The translations under genes and the position numbers were made by a program. This document shows positions 6,877-41,852 of a DNA stretch of 48,954 nt, in pieces. The DNA is from Octopus bimaculoides. Lineage: Eukaryota. The notes below the pieces were generated by a model that was given only the letters and a program-made list of their open reading frames with translations, did no database searches and was not told the DNA's origin. How positions within the stretch are numbered: position 1 is the stretch's first letter; every line of letters starts with the position of its first letter. The stretch spans positions 144,144,556-144,193,509 of the forward strand of contig NC_068984.1 in the NCBI RefSeq assembly GCF_001194135.2. The letters run 5' to 3'.

Positions 6877-6980
6877 CTGAAAACAGAAACAAAACAACAA
6901 AGCTAACAACAAATTCCGAATACAAATGACTAACTCTTTGAATTAACGTTTGATGGGGTTGTGTATACCGCAGTCATATG

Positions 6981-8897: not shown

Positions 8898-9296
8898 TTT
8901 TTTAGCACATTCTCGGACGCTGTTGAGGTCTATAAAATCCAAATGGACAACGCTTAACATTTTAGGGTCTATACCGGTTGAATTTCGAATTTCATCGGCG
9001 ACTTCCTCCGCTTTAGATATATTCCTACAGGCCATGATTACTTTGGCACCCTGCGCAACAAGATACTCGGCAATGGATCTACCTGTACCCGAAGTAGCTT
9101 CAGTAATAAGTATCGTTTTCCCATCCATTCGGAAGTAGTTTTTATGGCACTTGAAATGATAATGATATCGGATTTTCATCGCAATTTTGGAGAGAATATA
9201 CAAGCAACACGTTGTGACTATACACAACAATATCGTGTAGAAAAGCATCGTAAAGATTTTTCCGTTTCTATCGAAATAATTCACTGCAAGTGACAT
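8898..9296 (-). CDS. Short-chain dehydrogenase/reductase (RDH11-14/WWOX-like classical SDR), coding exon 1
   Basis: N-terminal hydrophobic anchor (MLFYTILLCIVTTCCLYIL), KTILITEATSGTG, KVIMACRN, VHLD. Donor AAA|GTGAGT at 8897 (phase 0). The start could instead be the ATG at 9248. Confidence 0.9.
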
Positions 9297-10090: not shown

Positions 10091-12779
10091 GCTGGACTTA
10101 AATCTCTATACCAAAGCATTATATCGTGTATGTATGTATGTATGTATGTATGTACATCAGATTACTAGTGCTTCTGGTAACATGTAACGCAGTACAACCT
10201 GCCGCATGATCGAGCTGTCAGCGACTAAACCGGCAACCCTATCGAGCCTGCTTGGTAAGGTGGAGGATTTTCGTTGGACACCCAGCAGGACGAAAAGGAA
10301 AACTAAAAAAAAAACAAAAACGGATGAACTCAATAGAGTCAACGGCTAAACAACAGCTGGGGGTGAGAGACCCCTTAGTTTCTTCTTGGACAAGGAAAAC
10401 ACTGATACGACACCTGCAACTTTGTTTGTATCACTGTCCCCCGCTTCCGTTCGGGGACATAGAAATACCGGATGTAACGCCCAGGCGCGCGATAAACCGG
10501 GGGAAATGTCATTGCCTAAACATCCGTTGAAGCAAATATCAATAATGAAATTCCGAAATAACAGCCACCTCGTTGTAAAACCGGAGACGTTGGTCTTACT
10601 TGTTTCTGGACTCTCACCTGGCTTTGTAGGTGAGAGTCTTAGCGACGTTGTGCAAGCTGTTAGTGACTTAAAACTTCAGCACGGCCATTGCTAACCGCCA
10701 TTGTCTTAAACATCCAGGATAAATTGTCAGTGACGATCATGCTCGTCTAACGAGTTGACAGCCACTATGTATGTATGTATGTATGTATGTGTGTGTGTGT
10801 GTGTGTGTCCACTCGTGTGTGTGAGAATATATTCGCCTGTCTATATCGATACTTCAGTTTACAGCATCGCTTTCACATTGATTGAAGCCAAGCAATATCA
10901 CCGTAATAAACCTTCAATCAGAGCCATGATGTTTATTGTTTTAATTTTTTTTTTTTTGCCTTTCCTCTTATCTTTAATGCTTTCAATTAAGAAGCTTGTT
11001 GTTATTGTCGTTGTCCTAATGATCTTAAAATACGTGATTCGATTTTTTTTGTAAAGGACTCACAACAGAGACACTAGCAAGTATGACACAAAGTTCGCTC
11101 GTCACACTTTAAAAGCGAAAACAAAAAGATAAATAATTCTAATAAATTTGGAATAATTACGAAGATATATATATATACACACACATAGATAGATAGATAG
11201 ATAGATAGATAGACAGGTAAAACTTACTTGGAAATGGATGCGTGGCGTTCGATCATATATAAATAATATATATGCATATATACATACATATATGTACATA
11301 CCTACATAAGTATATATACATGCATATATAGGTACAGGACGTCAAAAAAACGTGAACAAAATGAGAAACGAGAACATAAAAAACAAAAACATGGAAAACG
11401 AACAACGAAAGAAACGAGACAGACAACATAAAGAACAATCCCTTCATCACATATGTGTGTGTGAGAGAGAGAGAGAGAGAGNNNNNNNNNNNNNNNNNNN
11501 NNNNNNNNNNNNNNNNNNNNNNNNNNNNNNNNNNNNNNNNNNNNNNNNNNNNNNNNNNNNNNNNNNNNNNNNNNNNNNNNNNNNNNNNNNNAAAATGATT
11601 TTTTTATAATTATTATATTTAAAGATTTAACCGGTTTCACAGTTTACGCTGATTTTCAAAAAGTTGAAATAGAAAGACGTGGCTTCTGTCGTAGCTGTCC
11701 GGTTTCTGGGTAGTGCTTGAAGCTTGCCCCTTTTTTATAGGGAGTTCATGACTCAAATCGATACGTTTTGAATAGGACCTGATTGGTAGAGGATAGTTGC
11801 ATGACTGGTCTTAGAAATTTTTATAGGTTCCCCGCTACGTCCGTGTGTTAGTATCAAGTGACAATGTTTGGCGTCGTAAGTTAAGGCTGACACGGTTGAC
11901 TGAACATGTTTGTAGAGGGACTGAACCCAGGACCATGTGGTTGGGAAAGATGCCTCCTACCACACACCCACGCCAGGAACATTAATCATAACTACCAAAC
12001 GAAAAATTGGATAAAGTTATATTTTTGACGAATTAGCAAGCGTTACTGAAATTTTCCCCAGTAAGTTCTGGGGATAGGGTTAAGTCGATTACATCAATCC
12101 CTCTGTTCAAATGGTACTTATTTTTATTGACCCCGAAAGCATGAAAGGCGAAGTCGACCTCGGAGGAGTTCGAACTTAGAACGTAAAGACGGACGATATA
12201 TTGCAAACGATTTTACCCAGCGATCTAACGAGTCTCTGCCAGTTCGCTGCCTTTGTCACAATTATAACATTGGTGAACTTATATCATCTCAGCTCAAACA
12301 TTTCGACAGATGAGTTTACTGAAAGATTGCTCGTTTTTTTGGGGTTTTTTTTTGTTTTTTGTTATCATATTTATCTCAGCTGAGTAGGAACGAATGAGTT
12401 ATTTTACGATGTTATAAAACTACAGCTGTGTGTTGACTATGTGTTGGGGGTGTTTGAAAATGAAGTCTTTTCTTATGTAGTGACAGGAACTATGTGAGTT
12501 GTAGCTTAAAATGTATCCGTTGCATGTCCAAGTGGTCTTTTATTTGTTTGCATTTTGGTTTCGTTGTGTAACTAGTCAGTATATCCAGTGGTCAGTGTAT
12601 GCAGTGGTCAGTGTATCGGGTCTGTGCATGTGGTCTCTTATATTCAACATGTTACGATGTTTAGTGCACCGGTTTGTATTCGTCGTTGTTTATTTCTGTT
12701 GGCTGAATGTTGGTCTTGTGGTCGTTCTCAGTATATCTCTGTACCGTTTATTAAATGTGATGTTTTGTAGTATTTGATG

Positions 12780-14030: not shown

Positions 14031-15720
14031 AAGCTTATCCCACGGCCATCACCATGGAAAGGCGTCTCCATAGTTTCAGCTGATTTGGGGCAACATCGAG
14101 GCCCACATTCTGGAAGCTGCATCTTAATATGTATCTTATAATATATCAAGATGTGTTGATGAGAGAGAGAGGGGGGAGAGAAAGAGCGGGAGGGAAGGGG
14201 AGGAGGGGTAGGGAGAGACAGAGGGAGGTGAGAGGAAAGTAAGAGGAGGATATGAGAAAGAGAGAGTAAGAAAGTGGTAATCGACAAGGAGCGTCGATAT
14301 TCGATATTCGTTATCGATTCTCTCTCTCTCTCTCTTTCTCTCTTTCAACACTGAACTATAGATTGTAGATTGGACAGCAAGGAGGGAGGTAAGAAGTGGA
14401 GGATGAGGGGGAAGTTAGAGAGAAATGATTGATTTTTATCTTTTACTTGTTTCGATTAACCCCATGGCAACGGGGTTTTTTTTTTATCAGGTAACTAAGT
14501 TGCACTGACGGTAATCATCTCGGCTGAGATCAGCAATTAGTGCACGGCATTGCTTCGGTGTATATTTACGTTAACCCCTTTAAACTATGCACTGTTTAAG
14601 TAAATTGTCATCACTGAGAAGACCGTAAATTCAACGAACCTGGCGTAGCAGGATGCGATTGTTAATTCCGTGAAGGAGAAGAAGAATTTGCTGAACCTGT
14701 ACGAATTTGATAGGAAGTCGTAGTGGAAATGGTGGTTGAACCACCTAAACTGCTGCTGCTTTAAAAAAACAGGAAATTTGGTACAGTTTATTAACCCATT
14801 ACCTCCCATAATTCTATTAACTGGAATTTTTTTTATGAAACTTTGATTTCTAGCATAAAACAGCCTTAGAAACACACTGGAATGATCACAATAACATTTC
14901 AAAATAACATTTTAAATAGAAATAAGCAAGATATTGGGTGAAAAATTAGCAAACCTCATTTGAATATCAGAGAAATATACCTAGTAGATATAGCAAAAAG
15001 GTTACAAAGCGAACTCCTTCACCACACACCCATACNNNNNNNNNNNNNNNNNNNNNNNNNNNNNNNNNNNNNNNNNNNNNNNNNNNNNNNNNNNNNNNNN
15101 NNNNNNNNNNNNNNNNNNNNNNNNNNNNNNNNNNNNNNNNNNNNNNNGACTTGTCTGTCGGAAGGAACATTCCTCATCGCCTCACCGATCCTCTCAGACC
15201 TGCCAGATGACTGCAGGAATTGTAGAGAATCAAACATTCTGGTGAGGAAAAAAGGAAAAAAAAAACTGGGTGAATTGATTAGGGAGAGGAGGGATATGGG
15301 GGGAGGTGAGCAGAATATGATGACGGGAAGAGAGACCGATAATTACGAAATTTGTAATTTTTAAGTGATCTCATATGAGATCACTGGTAGGTAACGGGTT
15401 ATATTGTTGGAAACAAAAAACAGATGTTAAAAGAAACAGTTGTTAAAACAGAACAAAAACATGAATGTTAGATGTTGTGCTCAAACTGCTTTCCGTGGGC
15501 AGCTACACAACGACGTAGATTGTCAAGCTAAGCTGACCTCCAGTTGCCCTTTGGATGACTGCAAGCGGGATATTGTTCTGAGTTTCCACCAACACAGTTT
15601 TTAACGATCGTATGTCTATGACTTTTCCCCTCTGTAATTGAAGCTGATGTAACAGTAAAGCCCACATGGTAAAATCCATTACGTTATGGTAGTCAATTTT
15701 TTTAGTTAATTGATAAAGTA

Positions 15721-18764: not shown

Positions 18765-19421
18765 NNNNNNNNNNNNNNNNNNNNNNNNNNNNNNNNNNNN
18801 NNNNNNNNNNNNNNNNNNNNNNNNNNNNNNNNNNNNNNNNNNNNNNNNNNNNNNNNNNNNNNNNNNNNNNNNNNNNNNNNNNNNNNNNNNNNNNNNNNNN
18901 NNNNNNNNNNNNNNNNNNNNNNNNNNNNNNNNNNNNNNNNNNNNNNNNNNNNNNNNNNNNNNNNNNNNNNNNNNNNNNNNNNNNNNNNNNNNNNNNNNNN
19001 NNNNNNNNNNNNNNNNNNNNNNNNNNNNNNNNNNNNNNNNNNNNNNNNNNNNNNNNNNNNNNNNNNNNNNNNNNNNNNNNNNNNNNNNNNNNNNNNNNNN
19101 NNNNNNNNNNNNNNNNNNNNNNNNNNNNNNNNNNNNNNNNNNNNNNNNNNNNNNNNNNNNNNNNNNNNNNNNNNNNNNNNNNNNNNNNNNNNNNNNNNNN
19201 NNNNNNNNNNNNNNNNNNNNNNNNNNNNNNNNNNNNNNNNNNNNNNNNNNNNNNNNNNNNNNNNNNNNNNNNNNNNNNNNNNNNNNNNNNNNNNNNNNNN
19301 NNNNNNNNNNNNNNNNNNNNNNNNNNNNNNNNNNNNNNNNNNNNNNNNNNNNNNNNNNNNNNNNNNNNNNNNNNNNNNNNNNNNNNNNNNNNNNNNNNNN
19401 NNNNNNNNNNNNNNNNNNNNN
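18765..19421. other. Assembly gap (N run). Other gaps: 11482-11591, 15036-15147, 31598-31607, 34256-34684, 39294-39303, 41708-41717
   Basis: Runs of n in the sequence. Confidence 1.
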
Positions 19422-24547: not shown

Positions 24548-24584
<37 letters not shown>

Positions 24585-24748
24585 GTATCCCATCTAATAG
24601 AATTTTATTTTGAATTGAAGGATGTTTAGTAAGAATTGATGGAAGATGTCAATAAGTAAATATAGCTGCACAAGAGAACCTGTGCCAGCAAGAATGTCAG
24701 GCGGAAGCCTACAACTTTAATGCCATTGACCATTTTTTTCAAATGCTG

Positions 24749-27391
24749 TTAGTTAGTACGGGAAGATTTAAATTCGCAAATAAACGAATGTTCCACGCTT
24801 TTCTTCGAATTCCAACAATACTTATCCAACCATTTAAAGCCCCAAGCTTTTTTGATTTGATTACATCGTGTTTTTCTGAGAGTGTCAGGTCGGCCGGGGA
24901 AATAATTGGTATAAACAACAGCTTCGTTTGTACTTGCCCATTTCCACAGGCCATCATTATCCAGAAAGGTCGGTGACAACCATACAGTATTAGGGGTCCC
25001 TATGGTAACCAGAAAGTTCTCCAACATAAGTTCCTTTTGAAGATCTTTAACCGTGACTAGATTAGCTCCAAGACGCTTGCAGGTCTCTATGGCTCTTTTG
25101 TTCGACTGTTTCACAGGAATGTATTTAAAACAATAACCACCAATTTCTTTGGCAAATGCCGGGCATATCTGGCTGTGCATTGAAGAGTTTTTCCAGTGTG
25201 AAGGCAGGGTATTTTCACTCATAGCATTGCTAGGGTTCTCGTTGATCATCCTTATGTGTATTGTCACATTAACTGGATTTCTGTTTTCGTGCGTGGATAA
25301 AGGAAGTTCACATATGGTCCCATAACGGTTATTAGAATTACAAGAAACTAGCGACAATTTAAAATTATTGCTGGGATCCAAAACTAAACAATTTTCGTCG
25401 TATTTTCGCGACAAGTCCTTTGAATTGAACGGCATAATCATATGTGCTTTAAATTCTTTCGGGTTCAACGAAGCAATGCTGTCTTTTGACAGCCAGAGCG
25501 GGATATTGAGATCAGAGTATATTGCCAAAAATATTTTCATATCAGTCCATTCTTCTAATGAAAACAGGCTAGCAACTCGTGCGTCAATATTTTGGCAATC
25601 CGATACCGCTCCTTTCCAAGAAACACGCCTCGGCATGTAATGTAAACAGCGACGAACAGATTTAAACCAATTCTCTGGGCAAAATTTCACAGGTTTGACA
25701 TTCGGTTTGGCAGTAGCAGAAAATGAAGGTTTCAAGAAAGCATGATAATTGCTGGAGGAGGCCGCTTCCTTTTTGGCTCCTTGATTTTTAAAAGTAACTT
25801 CTGGTGGGTTAATCATATCCATTCGGACGATGGTGTGAGGAATATTCCCGTTTTTTTTTTTGCTTTGCAATTCAATAAAATTGGGGCTACTACGGTTAAT
25901 GTTTATGTGGAAAGTGTTCGAAGGTTTTGCTGTACTTGAAGGCACATTGCCCTTGGCACCTAGTCTATTATTTCTAAATAGGTTCTGCGCTCTTTTAATT
26001 TCCGACTTAAATCTTTCTTCCTCGTTGCAGCTGGTACAATTTATACGTACTGCCTTCATGTCAGTTACTTTGTCTTTAAGTCGAGCAATTTGATTTTCAT
26101 GAGAATTCCGACTGTCTTCGACACTTTTGAGTCTTAACTTAATTTTCTCTTGCTCTGTTTCTAGATTTTTCATTTTGGAATGAGTATTAAGGTCCTTTAA
26201 TCCATCGAGTTCCTTCTTAAAAGATTTTAGAGTCGATCGAAGATCTCCAATTTCTCTCACGGAATCTTTGTAAGCTTCAGACAGTGACACCATTTTATCT
26301 GAACATGTTTTGAACTTTAAACTTTGTTGTGTTAACATATTTCCAAACTCTCGTTGTGTGTTCTTCAGCTCGCTCAAACTCTGACGGGAATAATTTAGTC
26401 TGCTCTCAATGGTTTTTAATTTTAAGCCTGTGTCAGACACATGGGATTCATTTTGTGGATGGAAATGGTTCTTACCTTGTGTCATTACTTCAGAGAAATT
26501 GCTATTCATTTCAGTAATCGCGGATTTAACTTCTTCCATTTCTTCCTTCAGTTCATCCACAGTTAAAACAAGGCCTTGCAGTTCTGGGTTGTCCTCCGTT
26601 GGCGTCCATGATGTTACCGTATTCTCGTCACCTTTTGTTTCCTGTTCGTGTACGTCACCATTACAAGATGGTTTGCATTCTTCTTTTCTATTAAGGATCA
26701 ACATTCTTAAATTCTCGGCGGATTTCTTTAAATTCTTCACCTGAAGCGACAAAGATGTTAGTTCGCTTGATGAATCTTTTACTTCCAGGGAGATAATGTC
26801 AAACAGGTTCTTCATGCCAGCCAGCTGCCTCAGAAACTGGTGTATTTGGGCCTTCACCGTAGCAAAGTCCGCCTTTCCTTGATTTTCTTTAAATTCCAAT
26901 TCTTTTACTTTACGGTCAAGAGCAGCGACGGAAAGTTCTTGACGCATAACCGTTTCTTTAAATTGTTTCCCTGTCATCAGAAGAGACTTCGATTCTTTGT
27001 TTGCTTTCACTTTCAGCTCTGCAATGCTATCACTTATTTCATCTAGATAGGAATATTTTCTGTACAGTTTATCGATCGACTCCTTTAAGTTCGATATTTC
27101 CTTAAACAATGCTCTTTCTATAGACTTGCTGGTGTATTTCTTGATCACCTCCATGTCATCGCCGGATATTAAACAAATGCCATTATTGTCAACGTATTTA
27201 TAATATTTACACTCAAACTCTGTCTCCGACCGACAAGCATCGGAACATGCCCTTCGGGTGAGACCAAATTTCTTTTTAAGTTTCGGATCAGCTTGGATCG
27301 AAGAAGTCAAGTAAGGAAATACGATATGTACAAAAACGGATTCATAGATGAGGCAGAGAAGCAAAACCCTCTGACTGTGAGAGAAATACAT
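24749..27391 (-). CDS. 880-aa protein: putative signal peptide, PAN/apple domain (aa ~19-80), long coiled coil (aa ~81-470), low-complexity linker, two C-type lectin-like domains (aa ~571-694 and ~743-872)
   Basis: Uninterrupted 2643-nt ORF. CxxxC..C..C PAN core (ACSDACRSETEFECKYYKYVDNNGICLIS). Heptad-rich L/E/K segment. Two CTLD Cys patterns (CPENW..C..W...C...W.....C...C...ICE and CPAF..C..A...C...W.....W.W.....YTNY..G.PD...C...W.D..C...FICE). The start is ambiguous because a phase-1 acceptor (tccaAG) also exists near 27292. Confidence 0.9.
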   Translation of the reverse strand: MYFSHSQRVLLLCLIYESVFVHIVFPYLTSSIQADPKLKKKFGLTRRACSDACRSETEFECKYYKYVDNNGICLISGDDMEVIKKYTSKSIERALFKEISNLKESIDKLYRKYSYLDEISDSIAELKVKANKESKSLLMTGKQFKETVMRQELSVAALDRKVKELEFKENQGKADFATVKAQIHQFLRQLAGMKNLFDIISLEVKDSSSELTSLSLQVKNLKKSAENLRMLILNRKEECKPSCNGDVHEQETKGDENTVTSWTPTEDNPELQGLVLTVDELKEEMEEVKSAITEMNSNFSEVMTQGKNHFHPQNESHVSDTGLKLKTIESRLNYSRQSLSELKNTQREFGNMLTQQSLKFKTCSDKMVSLSEAYKDSVREIGDLRSTLKSFKKELDGLKDLNTHSKMKNLETEQEKIKLRLKSVEDSRNSHENQIARLKDKVTDMKAVRINCTSCNEEERFKSEIKRAQNLFRNNRLGAKGNVPSSTAKPSNTFHININRSSPNFIELQSKKKNGNIPHTIVRMDMINPPEVTFKNQGAKKEAASSSNYHAFLKPSFSATAKPNVKPVKFCPENWFKSVRRCLHYMPRRVSWKGAVSDCQNIDARVASLFSLEEWTDMKIFLAIYSDLNIPLWLSKDSIASLNPKEFKAHMIMPFNSKDLSRKYDENCLVLDPSNNFKLSLVSCNSNNRYGTICELPLSTHENRNPVNVTIHIRMINENPSNAMSENTLPSHWKNSSMHSQICPAFAKEIGGYCFKYIPVKQSNKRAIETCKRLGANLVTVKDLQKELMLENFLVTIGTPNTVWLSPTFLDNDGLWKWASTNEAVVYTNYFPGRPDTLRKTRCNQIKKAWGFKWLDKYCWNSKKSVEHSFICEFKSSRTN

Positions 27392-27498
27392 ACGTTACAG
27401 AATGTATATTGATTACCACAATATTGTAAAGGCATTCACTTAGTTAAATCGTTGCCAGAGGAGAAATTTAAACTTGACACACAAAACGCTACTTGCTG

Positions 27499-27506
27499 TG
27501 ACGTCA
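27499..27506. promoter_or_regulatory. Perfect CRE palindrome TGACGTCA about 110 bp upstream of the lectin ORF ATG
   Basis: Motif visible directly; function untested. Confidence 0.3.
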
Positions 27507-27854
27507 TCTCAATCTAAACACTTTCATAGGAAAGAGTGTTTTTGTTTGTTTATTTTAGTTAATAGCGGAGCGTTGGAGAGAGAGTTGCTTCCGTCGTTGG
27601 ACAGATGTAGAGGAAAAATTATGGCGTGTGTGTGTGTGTCCCCTTCAGCCAGTTTGGCTAGACCGATGAGACAGTAAAAGGCCTGACGGTATGACAACTT
27701 CCCCGTTTCGTGAGGGCAGGCCTCTCATCTGGTATTTCATATACTGTGACACCTTCTTCGCAGCTCGTCAAGCCGAGAAAGGGCAAACTGTCCAAGTATC
27801 GGCCGTTCTCTGACAAGTTTAAGGTCGGGCCTGTGGCAATGGAGACGTCCGGCG

Positions 27855-28240: not shown

Positions 28241-28599
28241 TGTATGTATGTATGCATGCATATTTGAGAGACGGTAGCTATGATGTAATACATTTGTCAG
28301 TAGTCTTGATCTGCTAAGACTTCGATAACTATGAAAAAAGCTACTTCAATGAGAAGGAATCTGCATCGTTGAATGAGTGCTAGAAATAGCAGCCAAATCA
28401 TCTTCAACTCTCACTTCACCGTTTTAGGTAGAAAGATATAAAAAAAAAGTTCAGCGCAGAATTGAATACTGTAATCCTAGATACACCACACCTGAAAAAT
28501 AAATGACGAGATGGTCACAACTAGAACGCCTGTCACCATATCGATAACTACCTCTACGCAGGGTCAAAATCGTTTACAAGCACGAATTAAGTCATATCG

Positions 28600-29420
28600 G
28601 ACATGACTCAAACTATGGCGGCTTTCAAAGAATCTTTGGTGCTATGGAGGTGTTCACTGACATTTTCCTCAATGCTGCTCTATGTATAGTAGTCCAGTGG
28701 ATTGAGATCTGGAGAATTAGGGGGCCATATGTTGGGGGGTGATGTGATCATGCAAATTGTCGGCCATCCTTTCTTGAGCTTTGTGTGATGGTGCAGAATC
28801 CTGTTGAAAGACATAAGGCCTTCCATTGCATACACTATTGAGCTAAGGCTTAATAACTTGATCCAGACCCTCAATATACACAGCAGCATTCACCCTTAGG
28901 CCTCGTGGGAAAAAAAGTGAGGAGTCATCACATGTCCTTCATTGCTAACAACACCCAAAACCACGACACTTGCAGGAAATTTTGTGTGCATTACTCTTGG
29001 AACCTCACAAGGGTCTGCAACATAGCCATCTGTCATTCCTTCAAGTTTTCTGGTCTTGGTCAAGGTTTTTCTCATCTGAGAAAGACCAAATCACACCATC
29101 TTCTGGTGGATTTTTAAGTTTGTTCAGAAGTCTTTTGGATCTGATTAAACGGTTTTCTTTTGTTTTTTCCTGATATGAATCGACCTCTCCTCATCACATA
29201 AGACTTGTATCTCTCGTCTTCCTGCACAACATTTCTGATAGATTTTTCTGACACACGAACTTTTTTGGGGTGATTGACCTTATTGATTTTCTTGGATTGT
29301 CTTCAGTGTTTTGTTTAACTTCCTGAATAAATTCAGGTGCCTTGATAGAATCAGAGCGTTTAGAATGTTGTTTTACATTTCGATACAGGTAATACACTTC
29401 CATCTTCTTTCTCTAACTCA
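28600..29420 (-). mobile_element. Degenerate Tc1/mariner-superfamily transposase remnant
   Basis: WPPNSPDLNPLDYY at about 28725-28683. RPYVFQQDSAP in an adjacent frame at about 28795-28830. An HTH-like segment (NPRKSIRSI) at about 29270-29310. Multiple stops and frameshifts. Confidence 0.85.
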
Positions 29421-31492: not shown

Positions 31493-32349
31493 TGTTTGTT
31501 AGAGCTGAGAGATGTCTTGCCATTGAAGCAGTCCTAGTCGTAGTAGCACAGAAGGAATGCGCACGCACACAAGCTACAGTCAGTGTCTGAGTTCACCNNN
31601 NNNNNNNACAATAATAATTAAAATAATAATAATAATGGTTAATTTTCGTCACAAAGCCAGCATTTTTGAAGGGAGCGGGAGGTCATTTCATACCATCGAC
31701 CCCCCCCCACCACCACCACCACTGGTTCCTTATTTCATCAATCCCAGAAGGGATGACCAGGCAAAGTTGACCATGACAGGATTTGAGCTCAGAATGTAAT
31801 AAACCTTAATAATAATAATAATAATAATAATATTGCTGATGACTATGATGATGATGATGAAAGTGTTTAGGGGTGGGGGGCAGTAGAGGAGTCAGTCCAC
31901 AGATAGAAGTCTGTGGTATTGTTAAGGGATTGGTAAACTCAAGATGAAGACCCATTAAAAACTAAATTTATTATTATTTTTATTATTAAGCACACAGCAA
32001 CAATAGTCACTGCTGCTGCTGCTGTTGTTACTGTTTTAAATTAAAACGTAAAAATGTACAAAAGAATGGAGCACCCAGTCTATTGGGCTTCATTACTGAA
32101 ATAGTTTCCATTTCAATTATTAATATTATTATTATTGTAATTATTAACAAAGTGCTCCCAAGGAATGATGGCGTAAGACAGCATATCAAGAAAGCTACAC
32201 ATGAAAATTTTGCAGATTTAAAAAGAAAAAACATCTCAACATGCTACAGTAGCAGGTTCAAATAACAGTGGAAGTGGCAAATGAGATGATTTACCCTTTT
32301 TTTTTTTTTAAATAAATATGGAAGGCTATGGCAGAATCTTTTAAAAAAA

Positions 32350-34111: not shown

Positions 34112-34982
34112 AAGTTACCTTCCTTGGGAGGCAAGGTGAAGAAAGGAACTAAGAAAATTAGTTGTATTACTGTTGTTGTTGCTATTGTTGTTGTTTTTAA
34201 AATATTAAAATAATCGACAATATCAAGGAAGAAGAAAGAGTCAACAGCCCCTCCCNNNNNNNNNNNNNNNNNNNNNNNNNNNNNNNNNNNNNNNNNNNNN
34301 NNNNNNNNNNNNNNNNNNNNNNNNNNNNNNNNNNNNNNNNNNNNNNNNNNNNNNNNNNNNNNNNNNNNNNNNNNNNNNNNNNNNNNNNNNNNNNNNNNNN
34401 NNNNNNNNNNNNNNNNNNNNNNNNNNNNNNNNNNNNNNNNNNNNNNNNNNNNNNNNNNNNNNNNNNNNNNNNNNNNNNNNNNNNNNNNNNNNNNNNNNNN
34501 NNNNNNNNNNNNNNNNNNNNNNNNNNNNNNNNNNNNNNNNNNNNNNNNNNNNNNNNNNNNNNNNNNNNNNNNNNNNNNNNNNNNNNNNNNNNNNNNNNNN
34601 NNNNNNNNNNNNNNNNNNNNNNNNNNNNNNNNNNNNNNNNNNNNNNNNNNNNNNNNNNNNNNNNNNNNNNNNNNNNNNNNNNNNTATGTGAAAGGGGAGG
34701 GGCGACATTTGTTAACGAGCCGATTTAGCTCAGTGGTAAATGTCGACAGTGTGTGGCAGCTAAATTTAATAGCCTTCAGATCCCCCCCCCCCTCCTCCTC
34801 CTCCCTCAGAGACAACCTCCACCAAAAGCCGACAGCACAGCTGACCATTCTCAGATGCTCACGTATTAGTCCCAAGTCCCTAATACTTCAGCACTTGCCG
34901 TTATAAATACAAAGAGGTTGGTTATAGAGAGAGGGAGAGAGATAGGTCAGCACTGAGAAAGGCTCCCCTCTGCTTGGTATCA

Positions 34983-35109
34983 TTATCGTCGGCCCGTAGG
35001 CGTCCGGGAACTTTTCCACAAACTGCCATTGATAACGATAGCATCAATAGACACAGATAAATGCTTCGTAGATGTCACTTCAGCAAAACTTTTACCACCA
35101 GAGTTGTAC
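34983..35109 (-). CDS. CAMSAP: CAMSAP/Patronin last coding exon: YNSGGKSFAEVTSTKHLSVSIDAIVINGSLWKSSRTPTGRR*
   Basis: Acceptor gttccAG, phase 2 (AA+G = Lys). KYNS..K.F...K.LS.S.DAI.I...LW ends the CKK domain; TAA at 34985-34983. Absent from the ORF track. The 5' part of the gene lies beyond the window. Confidence 0.93.
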
Positions 35110-35317
35110 CTGGAACAACCGAATACAAAAAGAAATTGTTAATTAGAGAAACTAACAGGTTCAAAAATTTAAGCAGAGCAATTATAAGCTTAGTTTAACG
35201 AATATATCATAACCAACACTACTAAACAATCACCATCAAGCGACTGAACACATCAAACAAATAATCACCATCAAACGTTCAAGATATTATTCAACAATCA
35301 TTAAAGAATTGCCATCA

Positions 35318-35705
35318 GGCATGGCTGGGTGGTAAGAAGTTTGATTCCAAACTACACAGTTCTGGGTTCAGTCCCACAGCATGGAACGCTGGGCAAGTGT
35401 TTTCCTTTAACAGCCTCAGGTTGACCAAAGCCTTGCGAGTGGATTTGGTAGAGAGAAACTGAAAGAAGCCCGTCGTCTATATATAGACAGATATATTCTA
35501 CAAGTGTGACTGAGTCTGTATTTGTACCCATCACTGCTTAATAACCAGTGTTGGTTCGTTTATATCCCCGTAACTGAGTGGTTCTGCAAAAGGGACTAAT
35601 AGAATAAATACCAGGTTTAAAAAAAAATAATAAGTACTAGGGTCAGTTCAGACAAGAATTCTTCAAAGCATTGCTCCAGCATGGCCGCAGTCTAATGACT
35701 GAAAG
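35318..35705 (+). mobile_element. Family B SINE in the last CAMSAP intron
   Basis: Same head, body and tail motifs as 13613-14030. Confidence 0.85.
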
Positions 35706-36064
35706 ACCTAACGGCCAACTGTAAAACAGAGTTATGTGTCCCAACCCCTGACATCTTCCCATTTGGTCAACAGGGGCCTTTCCTTCGGTTACTTGGCAAC
35801 CTCACTAGTGCTGGTGCTATATCTAAAAGATACCCAGTACATTCTGTAAAATGGTAAATGTTAGAAAGAGCACCGAACCATAGAAACCATATCAAAGCAT
35901 GCACAGGAGCTTGAGACAGTCCTGCAGCTCACTGGATCCTCTGTAATCACCGAACCATGGAAAAAATTGACGCTAAATGATGATGGTAGATTAACTTCCT
36001 TATAACATTGTTATAAACTAATTTCATTTAAACACTGCAATTAACCAATTTAATTCGAACTTAC

Positions 36065-36228
36065 TTGTAATATTTTTCAATATTTTTGCTAGTCACCAAT
36101 TTTGGTCCAATTCCATGAATTTTAACAGCCTCTTCATGCTCTGGGTAATAGGCATATAGTGACCGAAATGCACAACCTGTGTCCCGGAATAATATCACAA
36201 AATGCTTTGCATCGGATTTCGCAATTTC
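36065..36228 (-). CDS. CAMSAP: CAMSAP/Patronin CKK exon 2: EIAKSDAKHFVILFRDTGCAFRSLYAYYPEHEEAVKIHGIGPKLVTSKNIEKYY(K)
   Basis: Acceptor tttgtattgcAG (phase 0), donor AA|GTAAGT (phase 2). CKK motifs ILFRD.GC.FR.LY and GIGPK. Confidence 0.95.
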
Positions 36229-37214
36229 CTGCAATACAAAACACACACACACACATATATTAGTTTATTCCTGACAAATTACGAATTAGTCCTGTTGGTT
36301 GTACAAAAATACTAATTGATCTGAGAGTTATACTCTCAGAAACAGACAGAACCCAAAACCAAACCATTTGTAAAATTATTTGAAGTCAAAGACGGTTTCT
36401 ATAAGAAGGGGGAAGGACCATTACCTAGCAGAGAGAAGCATCTACAGGAATTGCCAGCAAATAGTCAAAAATAATCCTTTAAGGATATGAAGACAAAATA
36501 AGCAGATTTAACCATCAGAGATGGTTGCTGACACACACAGAGAATACTTGACAATGAGGTAAGGCAGAACAGAGGTCATTCCGTACGACTGCCATAGTAG
36601 TATAATAATAATAATAATAATAATGATCATCATCATCATCATCAACTGGTAGAAGGACAAAGGAAAAACTCTGGAAAGATGCAGTTATAGAGATGATGAA
36701 ATATTAATCGCGGTTCTTAACCTGTGGTCCGCAAAGATAGTATTGGGTGGATCCTTGAACTAAATTTAAAATTATATATAAGCATATTAAAGGGGGTCCG
36801 TGGGAAAACTCATTTAAACACAAGAAGTCCTTAGTAATGAAAAGACTGGGAACTACCGTATTAGTTAATATTTTCCGTTTTGCCACTAAGTAGGGGAGAC
36901 AACCCTAGACATATTTCTGATTTCGTCTGACAGTTATAGCTTCCCCTTAGCTTACCAATGACGTAATCATGATTCAGCGGTTCTCAACCTATGTTGGCTC
37001 AGTGACCCTTTTTCACCGAATTGCATTTTACCAATGCACCCCTGTACCATGTTTTGCAAATATAAAAATAGCTTATTATCCCTATCCTATTATTATATAC
37101 CATTCAGCTTGAACCTCTTTTTAGACATTTGAGTGAACACGGAACCCTGCAATTATATCAGGTTTTCTTGCTTTACCAGGCATGTTTTTGCTTTCTCCTG
37201 TCACACAATGTCCA

Positions 37215-37725
37215 ATGCAGGGTTTTGTGGCTGAGAAGACCCGGCAAATAAAGTGAGATCACAGCTGTCACCTACACCAATGTTGTATAACCAGCCCACT
37301 CAAAAAGTACCCTTGGGTCGTAGGGTGACATGCTGTGCTTGAGGAGACCTATTGAGTCAAGTACATCAAAATAAAAATCAAATCAAATGGAAATTGTAGT
37401 TGTGGTCCCCGTGTAGGTGGCACGTAAAAAGCACCATCCAAACGTGGTCAATGCCAGCTCCCTCTCCCCGACTGGCTTCCGTGTTGGTGGCACATAAAAA
37501 GCACCGTCCAATTGTGGTTGATGCCAGCAACCTTCAGGCCCATGCCGGTTGCATGTAAAAATCACCCACTGCACTCTCAGAGTGGTTGGCGTTAGGAAGG
37601 GCATCCAGCTGCAGAAACTCTGCCAAATCAGATTGGTGTCTGGTGTAGCCTTCTGCCTTGCCAGTCCTCAGTCAAATCGTCCAACCCATGCTAGCATGGA
37701 AGGCAGACGTTAAACGATGATGACA
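37215..37725 (+). mobile_element. SINE-like repeat (family D here) with a (GAT)n tail
   Basis: GGTGGCACGTAAAAAGCACC repeats, GTTGGCGTTAGGAAGGGCATCCAGCTG, CCAACCCATGCTAGCATGGAA.GC.GACGTTAAACGATGATGA. Related copies at about 18210-18425(+), 35710-35990(+) and 43485-43680(-). Confidence 0.8.
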
Positions 37726-37902
37726 ATATTTATTAACCTGGAAAAATAGAGGAAACGATAACAGCAGGAATGCCTATGGCTCTAGTAGGTCTGCTTAGTG
37801 ACATGTACTGCTGGGTGGAAGTTGACCTAGGGCTAAAGAACAATAACAACAACAGATAGACAAGGGTGGAACTGTAAAAACAAAAAAAATGATATGACTA
37901 AC

Positions 37903-38021
37903 CTCTAAGACTTTATTTTTCAGATCTAAGTTCACACATCCTGCTAAACAACAATGACTAATGGCATTAATTATAATGTGACGGTTTGACTTGGAGCTTG
38001 GTTTCACAAAGAGTTTGGGAC
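37903..38021 (-). CDS. CAMSAP: CAMSAP/Patronin CKK exon 1: GPKLFVKPSSKSNRHIIINAISHCCLAGCVNLDLKNKVLE
   Basis: Acceptor cttttccAG (phase 1), donor GAG|GTTAGT (phase 0). Motif GPKL..PS.KSN..II.NA..HCCLAG.VN is characteristic of the CKK domain. Confidence 0.95.
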
Positions 38022-38209
38022 CTGGAAAAGAGTCAAGAGGCACACGTGTGTGTGTATAAGCAGAACAACAACAACAACAACATCGTTTGGGGATTTGAAC
38101 AGAAAGAAAAGAAGTCAAGTTTTGTAGGAGACACATTGTACTAAACACACACACACACACACATATATATATACACACACACACATAAGGAGTAAGGGAG
38201 TAAAGAACC

Positions 38210-38660
38210 CCTTCAGTCACAAATGACCATGAGATTGCACCTAGAAAGGTCTCCTCCAAGGAACAAGTACGAGCAAGTTTGTTTTTTATGGAAGACCAGC
38301 AGTCCCCCATGCATACCAGCCTCCCCTCTCCACACCACTGATGTTATCCAAGGGAAAGGCAAAGGAATCGACACAGCTTGGCACCAGTGGCATTGGAACC
38401 CATTTCTACAGCTAAGTGAACTGGAACAACGTGAAATAAAGTGTCTTACTCAAGAACACAACACACAGCCTGGTCCGGGAATCGAACTCACTACCTCATG
38501 ATTGTGAGCCCGATGTTGTAACCAATACGCCACACACACACACACACTCGCACATACATACAAATAAAGTGTCTTGCTCAAGAAGACAACACAACTCAGT
38601 CCAAGAATCGAACTCACTACCTCGTGATTGTGAGCCTGATGCTCTAACCAATAAGCCACA
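38210..38660 (-). mobile_element. tRNA-derived SINE with a duplicated head (family A/F here) in a CAMSAP intron
   Basis: The head GGCTC(A)CAATCA(T/C)GAGGTAGTGAGTTCGATTC..GTGTTG..TTCTTGAG.AAGACACTTTATTT occurs twice (about 38440-38530 and 38555-38660), separated by (CA)n. Related copies at about 578-790(+), 46620-46740(-) and 48380-48500(-). Confidence 0.8.
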
Positions 38661-39293: not shown

Positions 39294-40722
39294 NNNNNNN
39301 NNNTATATATATATACTGCCAGCGTCTATACTTACCAAATAAACGCTGCCAGTTCTTGCATTCACTCCAAAAACACTTCCAATCTGTACTCATCATATAA
39401 ACATTGTGAACCAAGAACTCTTAGGTAAGATTTCTTAATTTAGTTTCAAGACATTATAGCAATGTGCCTTGAGTCAAATAAAGAACAGAATAAAAGACAT
39501 CTTGAAGGAAGAAAAACATCTAATTTTTTCTGCAATTGAGTGGGGAGGGGGTCAGAGAGAGAGAGAGAGAGTATAAAAGCATGTTTGATAATGATAATTA
39601 TAATAATATCAAAATTAAAAGAAGAAGGGTGCCATTGTCGTCTAGTGAATGCTATTTCGACATTCCATGTGTCTTCAACAGGTTCAAAAAATAATTTTGT
39701 CAATCTACTTCATTTTGGTTAATATATAAAGGATTGAGGTAACCCCTCCAGTTGACAATGGCATGCTTCTTCTAATTTTGACTCTATATCTTCTGGAGGA
39801 ATTACCTCAATCCTTTATATATCAATAATAAAAATAATAATAATAATACTGAAATACAAAAAGGATAGTTCCTCACAAAACTTTCAAAGGTAATTCTTAT
39901 AAGAAGCAGTAAAAAAACTCTCAGTTCTGAGGGTTAACTGAAATTATTGAAGTTTCTTGTGGTTCCATGCTGCTGGCTGCCAAAATGACAACTAAATAGC
40001 AGGATTTTTATTTGGGAAGTTCTTAGAGACTACTGGGCATATCCTAGAGATTTGTCTCTCATCACCTCTTAATTACAAAAACTAAACCACATCTAATATC
40101 ACTGGGTATGAGCAAATGTGGGAGGCCCTAAATTGTCAGTGAACCTGCTAGAAATAACAGCTACATCTCCTGCAAATCATACTCGTTTAATGTAGTTCTA
40201 AATACACAATGTCTGAATTATCTTTGAAATAACTCGGCCAGATCAGTGCCGATTTACAGGCTACAACAACAACAACAGGAATCCTGGAGGTACAGGAGTT
40301 TATAAACTTCCAGACAAGATTCAGTGCTACAAGACATGTTAGCAGTCACAGAAGATAGAGATTCCGGTAAAAGGAACCATGGGCTACAAAGATGCAAGAG
40401 ATCGCTTCATTAGAACACTACAGCCAGAGGTTAGCCTGGCTGCTATGAACTGAGGCGGCACAGTTTACGGTGACTGGTAAGGATATTAGGGTTCAATTGC
40501 AGAGGGAAGACATGAATGATAGAGGAGGAGATGGTTCAACGAATGATACAAGAAGATGTGGTTGTTGGATTTTAGGTTGAGGGCAGAAGATGCAAAAGTC
40601 ATAAGAAGAAATGATGTTATTCTATTATGATCGATTACAATGAGAGATGAACTTAAAGAGCATGAGGTTGGCCTCAGGTCAGCTCTGATGAACAAAAACA
40701 TTCCAGGCATGACCATCTGGCC

Positions 40723-41707: not shown

Positions 41708-41852
41708 NNNNNNNNNNCCATTCGTTGAGGTAACAACTTATGGAAAATTTGGGGTCACATTTTATAGCAGGAGTATCAGACAGCAGCCTGTTTTGCTGAA
41801 AGAGGTTATTTGCTTTGCCTGAAGGTTAAAAGGTCTTCTTATATGCCAGCAT

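What the first reader, a model, noticed from the sequence alone, without database searches (positions are those of the whole stretch)
24749..27391. Apparently intronless gene with an unusual signal peptide-PAN-coiled coil-CTLD-CTLD architecture
Seen: one 2643-nt ORF in a region where the neighbouring CAMSAP gene has small exons and long introns. It contains a PAN/apple Cys core, about 390 aa of heptad-rich sequence and two divergent C-type lectin folds. Known: coiled coil plus CTLD defines collectin- and scavenger-receptor-like oligomers, and PAN domains mediate protein or glycan binding. I do not recognise this combination as a named family. Inference: a lineage-specific secreted oligomeric recognition or matrix protein (immune, mucus, egg-coat or salivary). 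This is the best candidate in the window for an undescribed protein family.
Basis: partly seen in the sequence, partly recalled or inferred. Interest (0 to 1): 0.7.

Follow-up and report, generated by a model that had tools for sequence, protein, structure and literature searches.

The report
Intronless cephalopod PAN–coiled-coil–lectin gene
This is a real, strongly conserved single-exon octopus gene for a probably secreted rod-shaped protein with one PAN domain and two non-sugar-type C-type lectin domains; it occurs in octopuses, argonauts and cuttlefish, has an intron-rich relative in a scallop, and has never been studied.

Summary
Window 24749-27391 (minus strand) is one 880-codon ORF in Octopus bimaculoides. 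Chance expectation for an ORF this long is about 3e-26.

- **Architecture:** hydrophobic leader, PAN domain with two core disulfides, about 390 aa of heptad-rich helix in two blocks, a disordered linker, then two long-form CTLDs.
- **Sugar site:** CTLD2 carries RPD and WLD where sugar-binding lectins have EPN/QPD and WND. Both motifs are invariant in all homologues aligned. The classical Ca2+/sugar site is therefore lost.
- **Distribution:** same-architecture, single-exon orthologues exist in O. sinensis, O. vulgaris, Argonauta hians, the cuttlefish Acanthosepion esculentum and one unidentified contig.
- **Selection:** dN/dS is 0.25 between Octopus and Argonauta, and about 0.1 in PAN, coil 1 and CTLD2. 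The gene is functional.
- **New here:** a scallop relative (signal peptide, PAN, coil, Lys-rich repeats, one CTLD) has at least 13 exons. This points to wholesale intron loss, probably by retroposition, before octopods and decapods split.

No member is characterised. The best reading is a secreted coiled-coil oligomer that bridges ligands without calcium. The function is inferred, and expression was not tested. This is a new domain arrangement within a known superfamily, of moderate interest.

The parts
24749..27391 (-). Complete single-exon CDS, 880 aa plus stop (O. bimaculoides; orthologue of O. sinensis LOC118763081)
   Evidence: ORF listing. The gene range equals the CDS length. 91% identical 880-aa orthologues exist in O. 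sinensis and O. vulgaris. dN/dS against Argonauta is 0.25.
27290..27391 (-). N-terminal hydrophobic leader, residues 1-34. Presumed signal peptide. Cleavage site uncertain: about residue 18 by alignment to the scallop and decapod proteins, or after A34 by the -3/-1 rule.
   Evidence: It is the only segment with Kyte-Doolittle (KD) hydropathy above 1.6. No signal-peptide predictor was available, so this is an inference.
27128..27274 (-). PAN/apple domain core, residues 40-88. Invariant C49, C53, C61 and C73, with inferred pairs C49-C73 and C53-C61.
   Evidence: PAN_1 scores 23.5 bits on the isolated segment, above the cut-off of 21.4, and all 4 homologues hit. Plasminogen PAp is the only PDB hit and has the same Cys spacing. 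dN/dS 0.10.
26690..27124 (-). Coiled-coil block 1, residues 90-234: two long helices with a short break at about 169-173. This is the conserved part of the rod.
   Evidence: AF2 helices 90-168 and 174-234, pLDDT 70-76 in the fragment model. Hydrophobic a/d occupancy is 68% and 94%. dN/dS 0.12.
26588..26689 (-). Non-helical hinge, residues 235-268, containing C239-x3-C243. Variable between lineages.
   Evidence: AF2 secondary structure. Alignments.
25955..26587 (-). Coiled-coil block 2, residues 269-479. Fast-evolving helical rod.
   Evidence: AF2 helices 269-309, 319-400, 407-447 and 456-479. Heptad score above the 99th percentile of shuffles. dN/dS 0.44.
25697..25954 (-). Disordered N/S/K/P-rich linker, residues 480-565. 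Largely absent in the decapod homologues.
   Evidence: No secondary structure and pLDDT 21-27. Composition. Alignment gaps.
25292..25696 (-). CTLD1, residues 566-700. Long form with six invariant Cys (571, 582, 599, 668, 684, 694). Compact, NK-receptor-like, with no Ca2+/sugar motifs.
   Evidence: PDB sequence hits to NKR-P1B and CD23. AF2 core pLDDT 74-86. Foldseek hit to NKR-P1B with TM 0.73. dN/dS 0.18.
25169..25291 (-). Inter-CTLD linker, residues 701-741. Variable.
   Evidence: AF2 gives no structure here. dN/dS 0.61.
24767..25168 (-). CTLD2, residues 742-875. Long form with six invariant Cys (743, 754, 771, 843, 859, 872). Invariant GRPD and FKWLDKYC replace EPN/QPD and WND.
   Evidence: Lectin_C match over 762-865. 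Alignment to Endo180 CTLD2 places RPD under EPN and WLD under WND. The motifs are invariant. dN/dS 0.10. It is the closest counterpart of the single scallop CTLD.
27392..27509 (-). Conserved upstream block of 117 nt: likely core promoter and short 5'UTR. It holds an ACGTCA half-CRE (cAMP response element) and TTTAAAT (27466-27472, about -81 to -75 from the ATG).
   Evidence: BLASTN and MAFFT against Argonauta hians. Conservation stops abruptly about 120 nt upstream. Promoter function is inferred.
24558..24748 (-). Conserved 3'UTR of about 190 nt, with AATAAA at 24604-24609 (140 nt after the stop).
   Evidence: BLASTN and MAFFT against Argonauta. Motif positions.

Best explanation
The ORF is a functional, compact, single-exon gene of coleoid cephalopods. 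It has its own TATA-type promoter block and a poly(A) signal.

The encoded protein enters the secretory pathway through an N-terminal signal peptide. It folds into a two-disulfide PAN domain, a long alpha-helical rod of about 390 aa, a flexible linker and two disulfide-locked C-type lectin-like domains.

Inferred mechanism:
- The rod zips chains together into a parallel dimer or trimer.
- PAN domains therefore cluster at one end, and two to three pairs of CTLDs hang on flexible tethers at the other.
- Both CTLDs lack the Ca2+/sugar site, so they most likely bind a protein or other non-classical ligand without calcium, as NK-receptor-type CTLDs do.
- The assembly works as a multivalent extracellular bridge or adaptor between two kinds of ligand (matrix, cell surface or particle).

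Evolution:
- The gene descends from an intron-rich molluscan gene of the form signal peptide, PAN, coil, CTLD. A scallop relative is still like this.
- It lost all CDS introns, probably by retroposition.
- It gained a second CTLD before octopods and decapods diverged.

Shown: gene reality, architecture, loss of the sugar-site motifs, purifying selection, taxonomic spread, and introns in the scallop relative.

Inferred: secretion, oligomeric state and orientation, ligand class, bridging role, and retroposition as the route of intron loss.
For: - ORF and chance expectation.
- Domains.
- Helical heptad rod.
- All 4 PAN Cys and all 12 CTLD Cys are invariant across octopus, argonaut, cuttlefish and the P0155 contig. 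GRPD and FKWLDKYC are invariant too.
- Alignment to Endo180 CTLD2 places RPD under EPN and WLD under WND.
- dN/dS is 0.25 overall at dS 1.2, and 0.08-0.12 in the leader, PAN, coil 1 and CTLD2. It is 0.18 for the cuttlefish/P0155 pair.
- The only hydrophobic segment is N-terminal. No internal TM segment and no collagen-like G-X-Y run exists. In P0155 no 19-residue window, the leader included, reaches TM-strength hydrophobicity.
- Single-exon CDS in five taxa.
- Cuttlefish identity: run ERR12945500 is Acanthosepion esculentum genomic reads.
- Conserved promoter block and 3'UTR.
- Scallop relative: PAN_1 at 29.2 bits plus Lectin_C. hhalign gives 97.4% probability over PAN and the start of the coil. 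It has at least 13 exons over 25 kb.
- The scallop CTLD is closest to cephalopod CTLD2.
Against: - There is no expression or protein evidence for any member. Accession searches in the paper library were empty.
- No signal-peptide predictor was run. The octopus leader is atypical: E17 and H22 sit inside the hydrophobic stretch, and the -3 residue is poor if cleavage follows S18.
- Oligomeric state and orientation are not modelled. The monomer AF2 models are low confidence (pLDDT 45 and 62).
- No ligand is known.
- Retroposition is not demonstrated. No poly(A) remnant, target-site duplication or intron-bearing parent copy was seen in cephalopods.
- Scallop homology outside the domains rests on a short PAN/coil alignment. 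The N-terminal score alone would be borderline when scaled to the full database.
Confidence: 0.55

Rival explanations
1. It is a type II membrane receptor. The N-terminal hydrophobic stretch is an uncleaved signal anchor, leaving an 8-residue cytoplasmic tail. PAN, rod and CTLDs project from the cell surface like a scavenger receptor (SRCL/CL-P1, LOX-1 or CD23 type).
For: - The octopus and argonaut leader has a 20-residue hydrophobic run, with KD 1.97-2.18 over 19 residues.
- Residues 1-46 are almost invariant between Octopus and Argonauta (dN/dS 0.08). That is unusual for a cleaved signal peptide.
- Many coiled-coil CTLD receptors are type II. This is established knowledge.
Against: - In the decapod homologues the hydrophobic run is only about 11-12 residues. 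In P0155 no 19-residue window, the leader included, exceeds KD 1.27, which is too weak for a membrane span.
- The scallop relative has a canonical cleavable signal peptide on its own exon.
- The second half of the octopus stretch aligns with the first strand of the PAN domain.
- E17 and H22 lie in the putative span.
Confidence: 0.15
2. It is a classical collectin-like pattern-recognition lectin. The coil trimerises the CTLDs, which then bind microbial sugars through Ca2+, giving opsonisation or agglutination.
For: - The coil-plus-CTLD layout resembles collectins, tetranectin and shrimp MjCC-CL (PMC5645147).
- CTLD2's best sequence matches include the sugar-binding Endo180 CTLD2 and DC-SIGN.
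Against: - EPN/QPD is replaced by RPD, WND by WLD, and the third acidic ligand by Thr. All three are invariant in every homologue aligned.
- CTLD1 lacks the long loop region altogether.
- There is no collagen region.
- An 86-residue disordered linker separates the coil from CTLD1, so the coil cannot fix CRD geometry as a collectin neck does.
Confidence: 0.1
3. It is mainly a structural matrix component, for example of mucus, egg coat, statocyst or cuticle-like material. The rod and its disulfides build a polymer, and the PAN and CTLD domains serve as cross-linking ends rather than as recognition modules.
For: - The scallop relative carries long Lys-rich tandem repeats and was auto-named 'Mucin-19'.
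- CTLDs without sugar sites occur in biomineral and matrix proteins. Struthiocalcin, lithostathine and antifreeze protein II are among the fold and sequence hits.
- Extra Cys in the hinge and rod (239, 243, 363, 452, 455) could form interchain bonds.
Against: - The rod Cys are not conserved in decapods.
- The gene appears single-copy, and the cephalopod proteins contain no repeats.
- Nothing ties it to any tissue.
- This rival overlaps the best explanation and differs only in the biological role.
Confidence: 0.15
4. It is a dead retrocopy, a chance ORF or an annotation artefact with no function.
For: - The gene is intronless in an intron-rich genome.
- A transposase-like remnant lies just upstream.
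- No expression data exist.
Against: - The chance of such an ORF is about 3e-26.
- The frame is intact in at least six taxa across both coleoid superorders.
- dN/dS is 0.18-0.25 with saturated dS, and every structural Cys is invariant.
Confidence: 0.02

Closest known systems
Mizuhopecten yessoensis LOC110440600 (XP_021339426.1) and OWF37128.1, auto-named 'Mucin-19'; uncharacterised
   Same: Same module order: signal peptide, two-disulfide PAN with identical Cys spacing, a coiled coil of about 500 aa, a low-complexity linker and a C-terminal long-form CTLD without EPN/WND. hhalign gives 97.4% probability on PAN plus the start of the coil. Its CTLD is closest to cephalopod CTLD2.
   Different: It has one CTLD, not two. 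It has Lys-rich tandem repeats with small Cys loops in place of the N/S-rich linker. It has at least 13 exons over 25 kb against a single exon. Identity is only 26-31% within the domains.
Vertebrate coiled-coil CTLD proteins: collectins (MBL, SP-D), tetranectin, CD23, DC-SIGN, langerin, SRCL/CL-P1
   Same: [quoted passage not shown] CTLD2 aligns to SP-D, tetranectin, DC-SIGN and CD23 CRDs.
   Different: There is no collagen region, no PAN in those families, and no canonical Ca2+/sugar motifs. The rod is far longer. It is separated from the CTLDs by a disordered linker rather than abutting them. There are two tandem CTLDs per chain.
Mannose-receptor family (MRC1, Endo180/MRC2, DEC205, PLA2R)
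   Same: These are the best sequence and fold matches. The tandem CTLD pair aligns over about 330 columns.
   Different: There is no ricin-type Cys-rich domain, no FNII domain, only two CTLDs, no C-terminal TM segment or tail, and a coiled coil that the mannose-receptor family lacks.
Shrimp MjCC-CL (Marsupenaeus japonicus coiled-coil C-type lectin; PMC5645147)
   Same: It is an invertebrate secreted protein with a coiled-coil domain plus a CTLD. It acts as a bridge between a target and a cell-surface receptor.
   Different: MjCC-CL is described with a canonical CTLD that recognises bacterial glycans and a coiled-coil domain, and no PAN domain is reported. No sequence relationship was tested here.
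Nematode CTLD + PAN/CW proteins (C. elegans class IV CLECs; PMC5297725)
   Same: A PAN-type module and a CTLD co-occur in one secreted protein. Deuterostome 'mannose receptor-like' proteins with internal PAN modules also turned up.
   Different: They have no long coiled coil and a different domain order and number. The PAN subtype is the nematode CW/PAN_3 type. No specific similarity was detected.
Plasminogen PAp / HGF N-domain (PAN module)
   Same: The same C-x3-C-x7-C-x11-C core is present, and plasminogen is the only PDB sequence hit for the N-terminal module.
   Different: The hit is weak (E=0.04). The AF2 model of this module is low confidence. The protein context is unrelated.

Membership tests
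C-type lectin-like domain superfamily (Pfam PF00059) | Profile match above the curated cut-off | tested here: met
   Lectin_C scores 39.1 bits against a cut-off of 22.6, with two stretches. The cuttlefish, P0155 and scallop relatives score 35-53 bits.
C-type lectin-like domain superfamily (Pfam PF00059) | Four core Cys, plus the two extra N-terminal Cys of long-form CTLDs | tested here: met
   Each domain has six Cys (571, 582, 599, 668, 684, 694 and 743, 754, 771, 843, 859, 872). All are invariant in four divergent homologues.
C-type lectin-like domain superfamily (Pfam PF00059) | CTLD fold | tested here: met
   Foldseek hits to tandem and single CTLDs, with E down to 2e-9 and TM up to 0.73 normalised to the target. 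The model is only moderately confident: CTLD1 core pLDDT 74-86, and the second half of CTLD2 below 50.
Ca2+-dependent carbohydrate-recognition domains (true C-type lectins) | EPN or QPD motif plus WND motif, which form Ca2+ site 2 | tested here: not met
   CTLD2 has RPD and WLD. By position count against remembered DC-SIGN numbering (not a tool alignment), a Thr sits where the third acidic ligand would be. The alignment to Endo180 CTLD2 shows the RPD and WLD substitutions, and they are invariant. CTLD1 has no equivalent loop.
Collectins (CTLD group III) | Collagen-like Gly-X-Y repeat region | tested here: not met
   No run of three or more G-X-Y triplets. Pro plus Gly make up 3.9% of the rod.
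Collectins (CTLD group III) | Short coiled-coil neck directly abutting a single CRD | tested here: not met
   An 86-residue disordered linker lies between the last helix (ends at 479) and CTLD1 (starts at about 566). There are two CTLDs.
Mannose-receptor family (CTLD group VI) | N-terminal ricin-type domain, FNII domain, 8-10 CTLDs and a C-terminal TM segment | tested here: not met
   Pfam finds only PAN_1 and Lectin_C. There is no internal or C-terminal hydrophobic segment.
PAN/apple module (Pfam PF00024) | Profile match above the curated cut-off | tested here: met
   It scores 18.3 bits in the whole protein, which is below the cut-off. The isolated segment scores 23.5 bits against the cut-off of 21.4, and all four homologues hit. 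Within whole proteins, cuttlefish scores 23.5, P0155 21.5 and scallop 29.2 bits.
PAN/apple module (Pfam PF00024) | Core disulfide pattern: a helix carrying C-x3-C pinned to a hairpin | tested here: inconclusive
   The four invariant Cys have the plasminogen spacing. AF2 places a helix on C49-C53 and two short strands, but pLDDT is only about 40-50. The third, apple-type disulfide is absent.
Processed retrogene | Intronless CDS while relatives carry introns at many positions | tested here: met
   The CDS is single-exon in Octopus, Argonauta, cuttlefish and P0155. The scallop relative has at least 13 coding exons.
Processed retrogene | Poly(A) remnant, target-site duplications, and an intron-bearing parent copy in the same genome | tested here: not met
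   There is no A-run after the poly(A) signal. No second cephalopod paralogue appears among the 150 best representatives. Erosion of these marks is expected for an insertion that predates the octopod/decapod split, so their absence does not exclude retroposition.
Secreted protein | Cleavable N-terminal signal peptide | not testable with these tools
   No SignalP or DeepTMHMM was available. Indirect support: the only hydrophobic segment is N-terminal, the disulfide-rich extracellular domain types are conserved, and the scallop relative has a canonical signal peptide on its own exon.

The most novel reading that the evidence does not exclude
The gene defines an undescribed molluscan group of CTLD proteins with the layout signal peptide, PAN, long coiled coil, CTLD. 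Its coleoid branch arose from one ancient retroposition before the octopod/decapod split. That copy acquired its own TATA promoter and a second CTLD, and it replaced the intron-bearing parent. The product would be a calcium-independent, rod-shaped oligomeric adaptor with a cephalopod-specific extracellular role, for example in haemocyte recognition or in a secreted matrix.
Probability: 0.4. Interest if true: 0.5.

Novelty: new variant of a known kind. Interest (0 to 1): 0.38.

Why it matters
Invertebrate CTLD proteins are numerous, but few have defined architectures or roles. This one has several features that make it tractable.

- It appears single-copy and is deeply conserved, under strong purifying selection.
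- It combines three well-understood modules in an arrangement not reported in the papers I could search.
- It is conserved across both coleoid superorders.
- It is compact and intronless, so it is easy to clone and express.

It also gives a clean example of wholesale intron loss, probably by retroposition, in otherwise intron-rich cephalopod genomes. An intron-rich bivalve relative serves as the outgroup.

If it proves to be a calcium-independent oligomeric adaptor, it would add a molluscan counterpart to the collectin and scavenger-receptor design. It remains a domain-shuffled member of a very large superfamily with no functional data, so the likely impact is moderate.

Tried and rejected
1. 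The profile-based homologous-protein search with the C-terminal alignment returned nothing, not even the query's own cluster. I treated this as a tool or word-index failure, not as evidence.
2. Single-sequence word-indexed searches were swamped by coiled-coil words and found only close orthologues. The exhaustive representative search was what revealed the cuttlefish and scallop relatives.
3. The full-length AF2 model was low confidence (pLDDT 45). I used it only for secondary structure and the CTLD cores. The PAN+coil fragment model did not resolve the PAN fold.
4. I searched for synteny by looking for CAMSAP CKK or SDR exons within 10 kb of the Argonauta and P0155 genes. None was found, so synteny is undetermined.
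5. The transposase-like remnant upstream was seen by eye. Pfam gave no hit on three separate pieces or on four pieces joined.
6. Literature searches for the accessions, the locus name and the architecture found no characterisation.
7. A chance ORF or dead retrocopy is rejected on conservation.
8. Collectin or mannose-receptor membership is rejected on missing defining features.
9. The antisense 111-aa ORF at 26409-26744 (+) is unsupported and was not pursued.


Full report
**The observation**

The window is Octopus bimaculoides chromosome CM046604.1, from assembly GCA_001194135.2. An ATG-to-stop ORF of 880 codons occupies exactly 24749-27391, on the minus strand. At 39% GC, the chance that 880 codons stay open is about 3e-26. 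No other real ORF in the window exceeds 229 aa. The annotated gene range equals the CDS length, so the coding region has no intron.

**Domain architecture**

*C-type lectin-like domains (CTLDs)*
- Pfam finds Lectin_C at E=1.4e-9 with two stretches.
- PDB sequence search matches CTLD2 (about 742-875) to Endo180, type II antifreeze proteins, mosquito GCTLs, lithostathine and DC-SIGN. CTLD1 (about 566-700) matches NKR-P1 and CD23 more weakly.
- A Foldseek search with the AlphaFold model aligns both CTLDs together to the tandem CTLDs of the mannose receptor, Endo180, DEC205 and PLA2R. E reaches 2e-9. Single CTLDs match with TM up to 0.73.
- Each CTLD has the six cysteines of the long form.

*PAN domain*
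- The N-terminal Cys module scores below the PAN_1 cut-off inside the whole protein: 18.3 bits against 21.4. As an isolated segment it scores above it, at 23.5 bits.
- All four divergent homologues hit PAN_1. Within whole proteins, the cuttlefish, P0155 and scallop relatives pass the cut-off.
- The only PDB hit is the plasminogen PAp domain. It shares the exact spacing C-x3-C-x7-C-x11-C.
- Alignment to homologues suggests the PAN domain starts near residue 24. The apparently over-long hydrophobic leader is then probably a signal peptide of about 18 residues followed by the first hydrophobic PAN strand.

*Rod and linkers*
- AlphaFold predicts long helices at 90-168, 174-234, 269-309, 319-400, 407-447 and 456-479. 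A non-helical hinge lies at 235-268. Unstructured linkers lie at 480-565 and 701-741.
- A fragment model gives pLDDT 70-76 for the first two helices.
- A simple heptad score exceeds the 99th percentile of shuffles in six segments.
- In a single register per helix, 68-94% of a/d positions are hydrophobic in the five helices tested.
- There is no collagen-like G-X-Y run and no internal hydrophobic segment.

**The sugar site**

The alignment to the sugar-binding Endo180 CTLD2 places RPD under EPN and WLD under WND. By position count against remembered DC-SIGN numbering, not a tool alignment, a Thr sits where the third acidic Ca2+ ligand would be. GRPD and FKWLDKYC are invariant in all homologues aligned. 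CTLD1 lacks the loop altogether. The classical Ca2+/carbohydrate site is therefore absent, and this state is conserved, not decayed.

**Relatives and selection**

*Orthologues*

| Taxon | Protein | Length | Identity |
|---|---|---|---|
| O. sinensis | XP_036358255.1, 'uncharacterized LOC118763081' | 880 aa | 91% to window |
| O. vulgaris | CAI9721023.1 | 880 aa | 91% to window |
| Argonauta hians | GAB1597926.1 | 853 aa | 58-61% to window |
| Cuttlefish | P0005/P0154 (ORF 806 aa, 785 aa called) | see left | 32-35% to window in the domains |
| Unidentified ENA contig | P0155 | 796 aa | 65% to cuttlefish |

- All of these have a single-exon CDS and the same architecture.
- The cuttlefish homologue came from the exhaustive representative search. 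It sits on contigs from nine sequencing runs.
- One of those runs, ERR12945500, is cited as Acanthosepion (Sepia) esculentum short reads by bioRxiv 10.1101/2025.04.22.649952. The contigs look genomic, since they end in microsatellites and show no poly(A).
- The family therefore spans both coleoid superorders.

*Selection*
- All 4 PAN and 12 CTLD cysteines are invariant.
- Nei-Gojobori dN/dS between Octopus and Argonauta is 0.25, at saturated dS of about 1.2.
- By region it is 0.08 (residues 1-46), 0.10 (PAN), 0.12 (coil 1), 0.44 (coil 2), 0.18 (CTLD1) and 0.10 (CTLD2).
- The cuttlefish/P0155 pair gives 0.18.
- This is a functional gene, not a dead retrocopy.

**A scallop relative with introns**

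I rescanned the 150 best representatives with the N-terminal 240 residues. This picked out two isoforms of one Mizuhopecten yessoensis gene: XP_021339426.1, 'uncharacterized LOC110440600', and OWF37128.1, auto-named 'Mucin-19'.
- Module order: a canonical signal peptide, a PAN domain with the same Cys spacing (PAN_1 at 29.2 bits), about 500 aa of coil, Lys-rich tandem repeats, and one long-form CTLD without EPN/WND.
- hhalign of the cephalopod N-terminal profile against it gives 97.4% probability over PAN and the start of the coil.
- Its CTLD is closer to cephalopod CTLD2 (E 1e-16 to 1e-19) than to CTLD1.
- The gene spans 25 kb with at least 13 coding exons. The signal peptide and PAN each sit on their own exon.

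The cephalopod genes thus look like the intronless derivative of an intron-rich molluscan gene. Retroposition is the simplest route. However, no poly(A) remnant or parent copy was found, so it remains an inference.

**Transcription unit and context**

- Octopus and Argonauta share a 117-nt block directly upstream of the ATG. It contains ACGTCA and TTTAAAT at about -81 to -75. Similarity ends abruptly beyond it.
- Downstream, about 190 nt are conserved, including AATAAA 140 nt after the stop.
- This fits a compact mRNA of about 2.9 kb with its own promoter.
- The gene lies 7.6 kb downstream of the last coding exon of a CAMSAP gene on the same strand. Three CKK-domain exons are confirmed by Pfam.
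- It lies upstream of a two-exon short-chain dehydrogenase.
- No CAMSAP or SDR exon lies within 10 kb of the Argonauta or P0155 genes.

**How it most likely works**

*Shown*
- A conserved protein with extracellular-type, disulfide-rich modules at both ends of a long heptad rod.
- CTLDs that cannot bind Ca2+ and sugar in the classical way.
- Flexible tethers between the rod and the CTLDs.

*Inferred*
- Secretion through a cleaved leader.
- Parallel oligomerisation of the rod into a dimer or trimer.
- The result is a multivalent bridge, with clustered PAN domains at one end and several tethered CTLD pairs at the other.
- Those CTLDs would bind protein or other non-classical ligands without calcium.

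*Rivals*
- A type II membrane-anchored receptor. This is weakened by the short, weak hydrophobic leader in decapods and by the cleavable signal peptide in scallop.
- A classical sugar-binding collectin-like lectin. This is contradicted by the motifs, the absence of collagen and the long linker.
- A primarily structural matrix protein. This is compatible with the data and differs only in biological role.
- A non-functional ORF, which is rejected.

**Comparison with known families**

The protein belongs to the CTLD superfamily and carries a PAN module. It fails the defining features of true C-type lectin CRDs, collectins and the mannose-receptor family.

Pairs of its modules are known elsewhere:
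- Coil plus CTLD occurs in collectins, tetranectin, CD23, DC-SIGN and shrimp MjCC-CL (PMC5645147).
- PAN plus CTLD occurs in nematode CLECs (PMC5297725) and in deuterostome mannose-receptor-like proteins.

I found no description of the three-part arrangement and no characterised member.

**Verdict**

This is a new domain arrangement within a known superfamily. It is already present in databases as an uncharacterised protein. It has an interesting evolutionary history: ancient wholesale intron loss and the gain of a second CTLD. Expression, secretion, oligomeric state and ligand remain untested. Interest is moderate.

Noticed in passing
window 34983-38343, minus strand: This is the 3' end of a CAMSAP gene. 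Three CKK-domain exons lie within 37798-38343, at 36064-36264 and at 34986-35138 (Pfam CAMSAP_CKK E=1.4e-13, 3.5e-21 and 1.6e-5). The called gene ends at 34983, which is 7.6 kb upstream of the lectin gene's ATG on the same strand.
   Followed up: yes
window 6226-6912 and 8889-9296, minus strand: A two-exon short-chain dehydrogenase/reductase gene. adh_short profile positions 1-71 and 72-134 fall on the two exons, and the first exon has an N-terminal hydrophobic segment.
   Followed up: partly
window about 28450-29300, minus strand: A frameshifted Tc1/mariner-like transposase remnant, seen by eye about 1-2 kb upstream of the lectin gene (FSDEKN..., QQDSAPSHKA, WPPNSPDLNPLDYY). Pfam gave no hit on three separate pieces or on four pieces joined, so it is unconfirmed.
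   Followed up: partly
window 27250-27509, minus strand (codons 1-46 plus 117 nt upstream): Synonymous divergence between Octopus and Argonauta is much lower in the first 46 codons (dS 0.38 against about 1.2 elsewhere). Among identical amino acids, 72-80% keep the same codon against 60% overall. This stretch is contiguous with the conserved upstream block. The nucleotide-level constraint is unexplained. It could be promoter-proximal elements, translation initiation, RNA structure or RNA editing.
   Followed up: partly
L013 3001-28376 (Mizuhopecten yessoensis NEDP02005595.1): The scallop relative has at least 13 coding exons. It has a Lys-rich tandem repeat region (KHVKGTKGKKK units interspersed with KCPSGTRLRGNKCHPKTYSW loops) whose copy number differs between the two deposited models (957 aa against 1314 aa).
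   Followed up: partly
window 11482-11591, 15036-15147, 18765-19421, 31598-31607, 34256-34684, 39294-39303, 41708-41717: These are assembly gaps (runs of N). Several 'ORFs' listed across them are artefacts. The window also holds many CA/TA/CT microsatellites, for example just after the lectin gene's poly(A) signal.
   Followed up: no
window 26409-26744, plus strand: A 111-aa ORF lies antisense to the coiled-coil region of the lectin gene. Nothing supports it, and it is most likely a chance by-product of the biased codon content of the sense strand.
   Followed up: no
L012 (ENA ERZ21867824, contig ctg107077l): A 99.7-kb contig in an ENA assembly carries a full-length family member that is 65% identical to the cuttlefish protein. 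It is probably from a decapodiform cephalopod, but the source organism was not identified.
   Followed up: no
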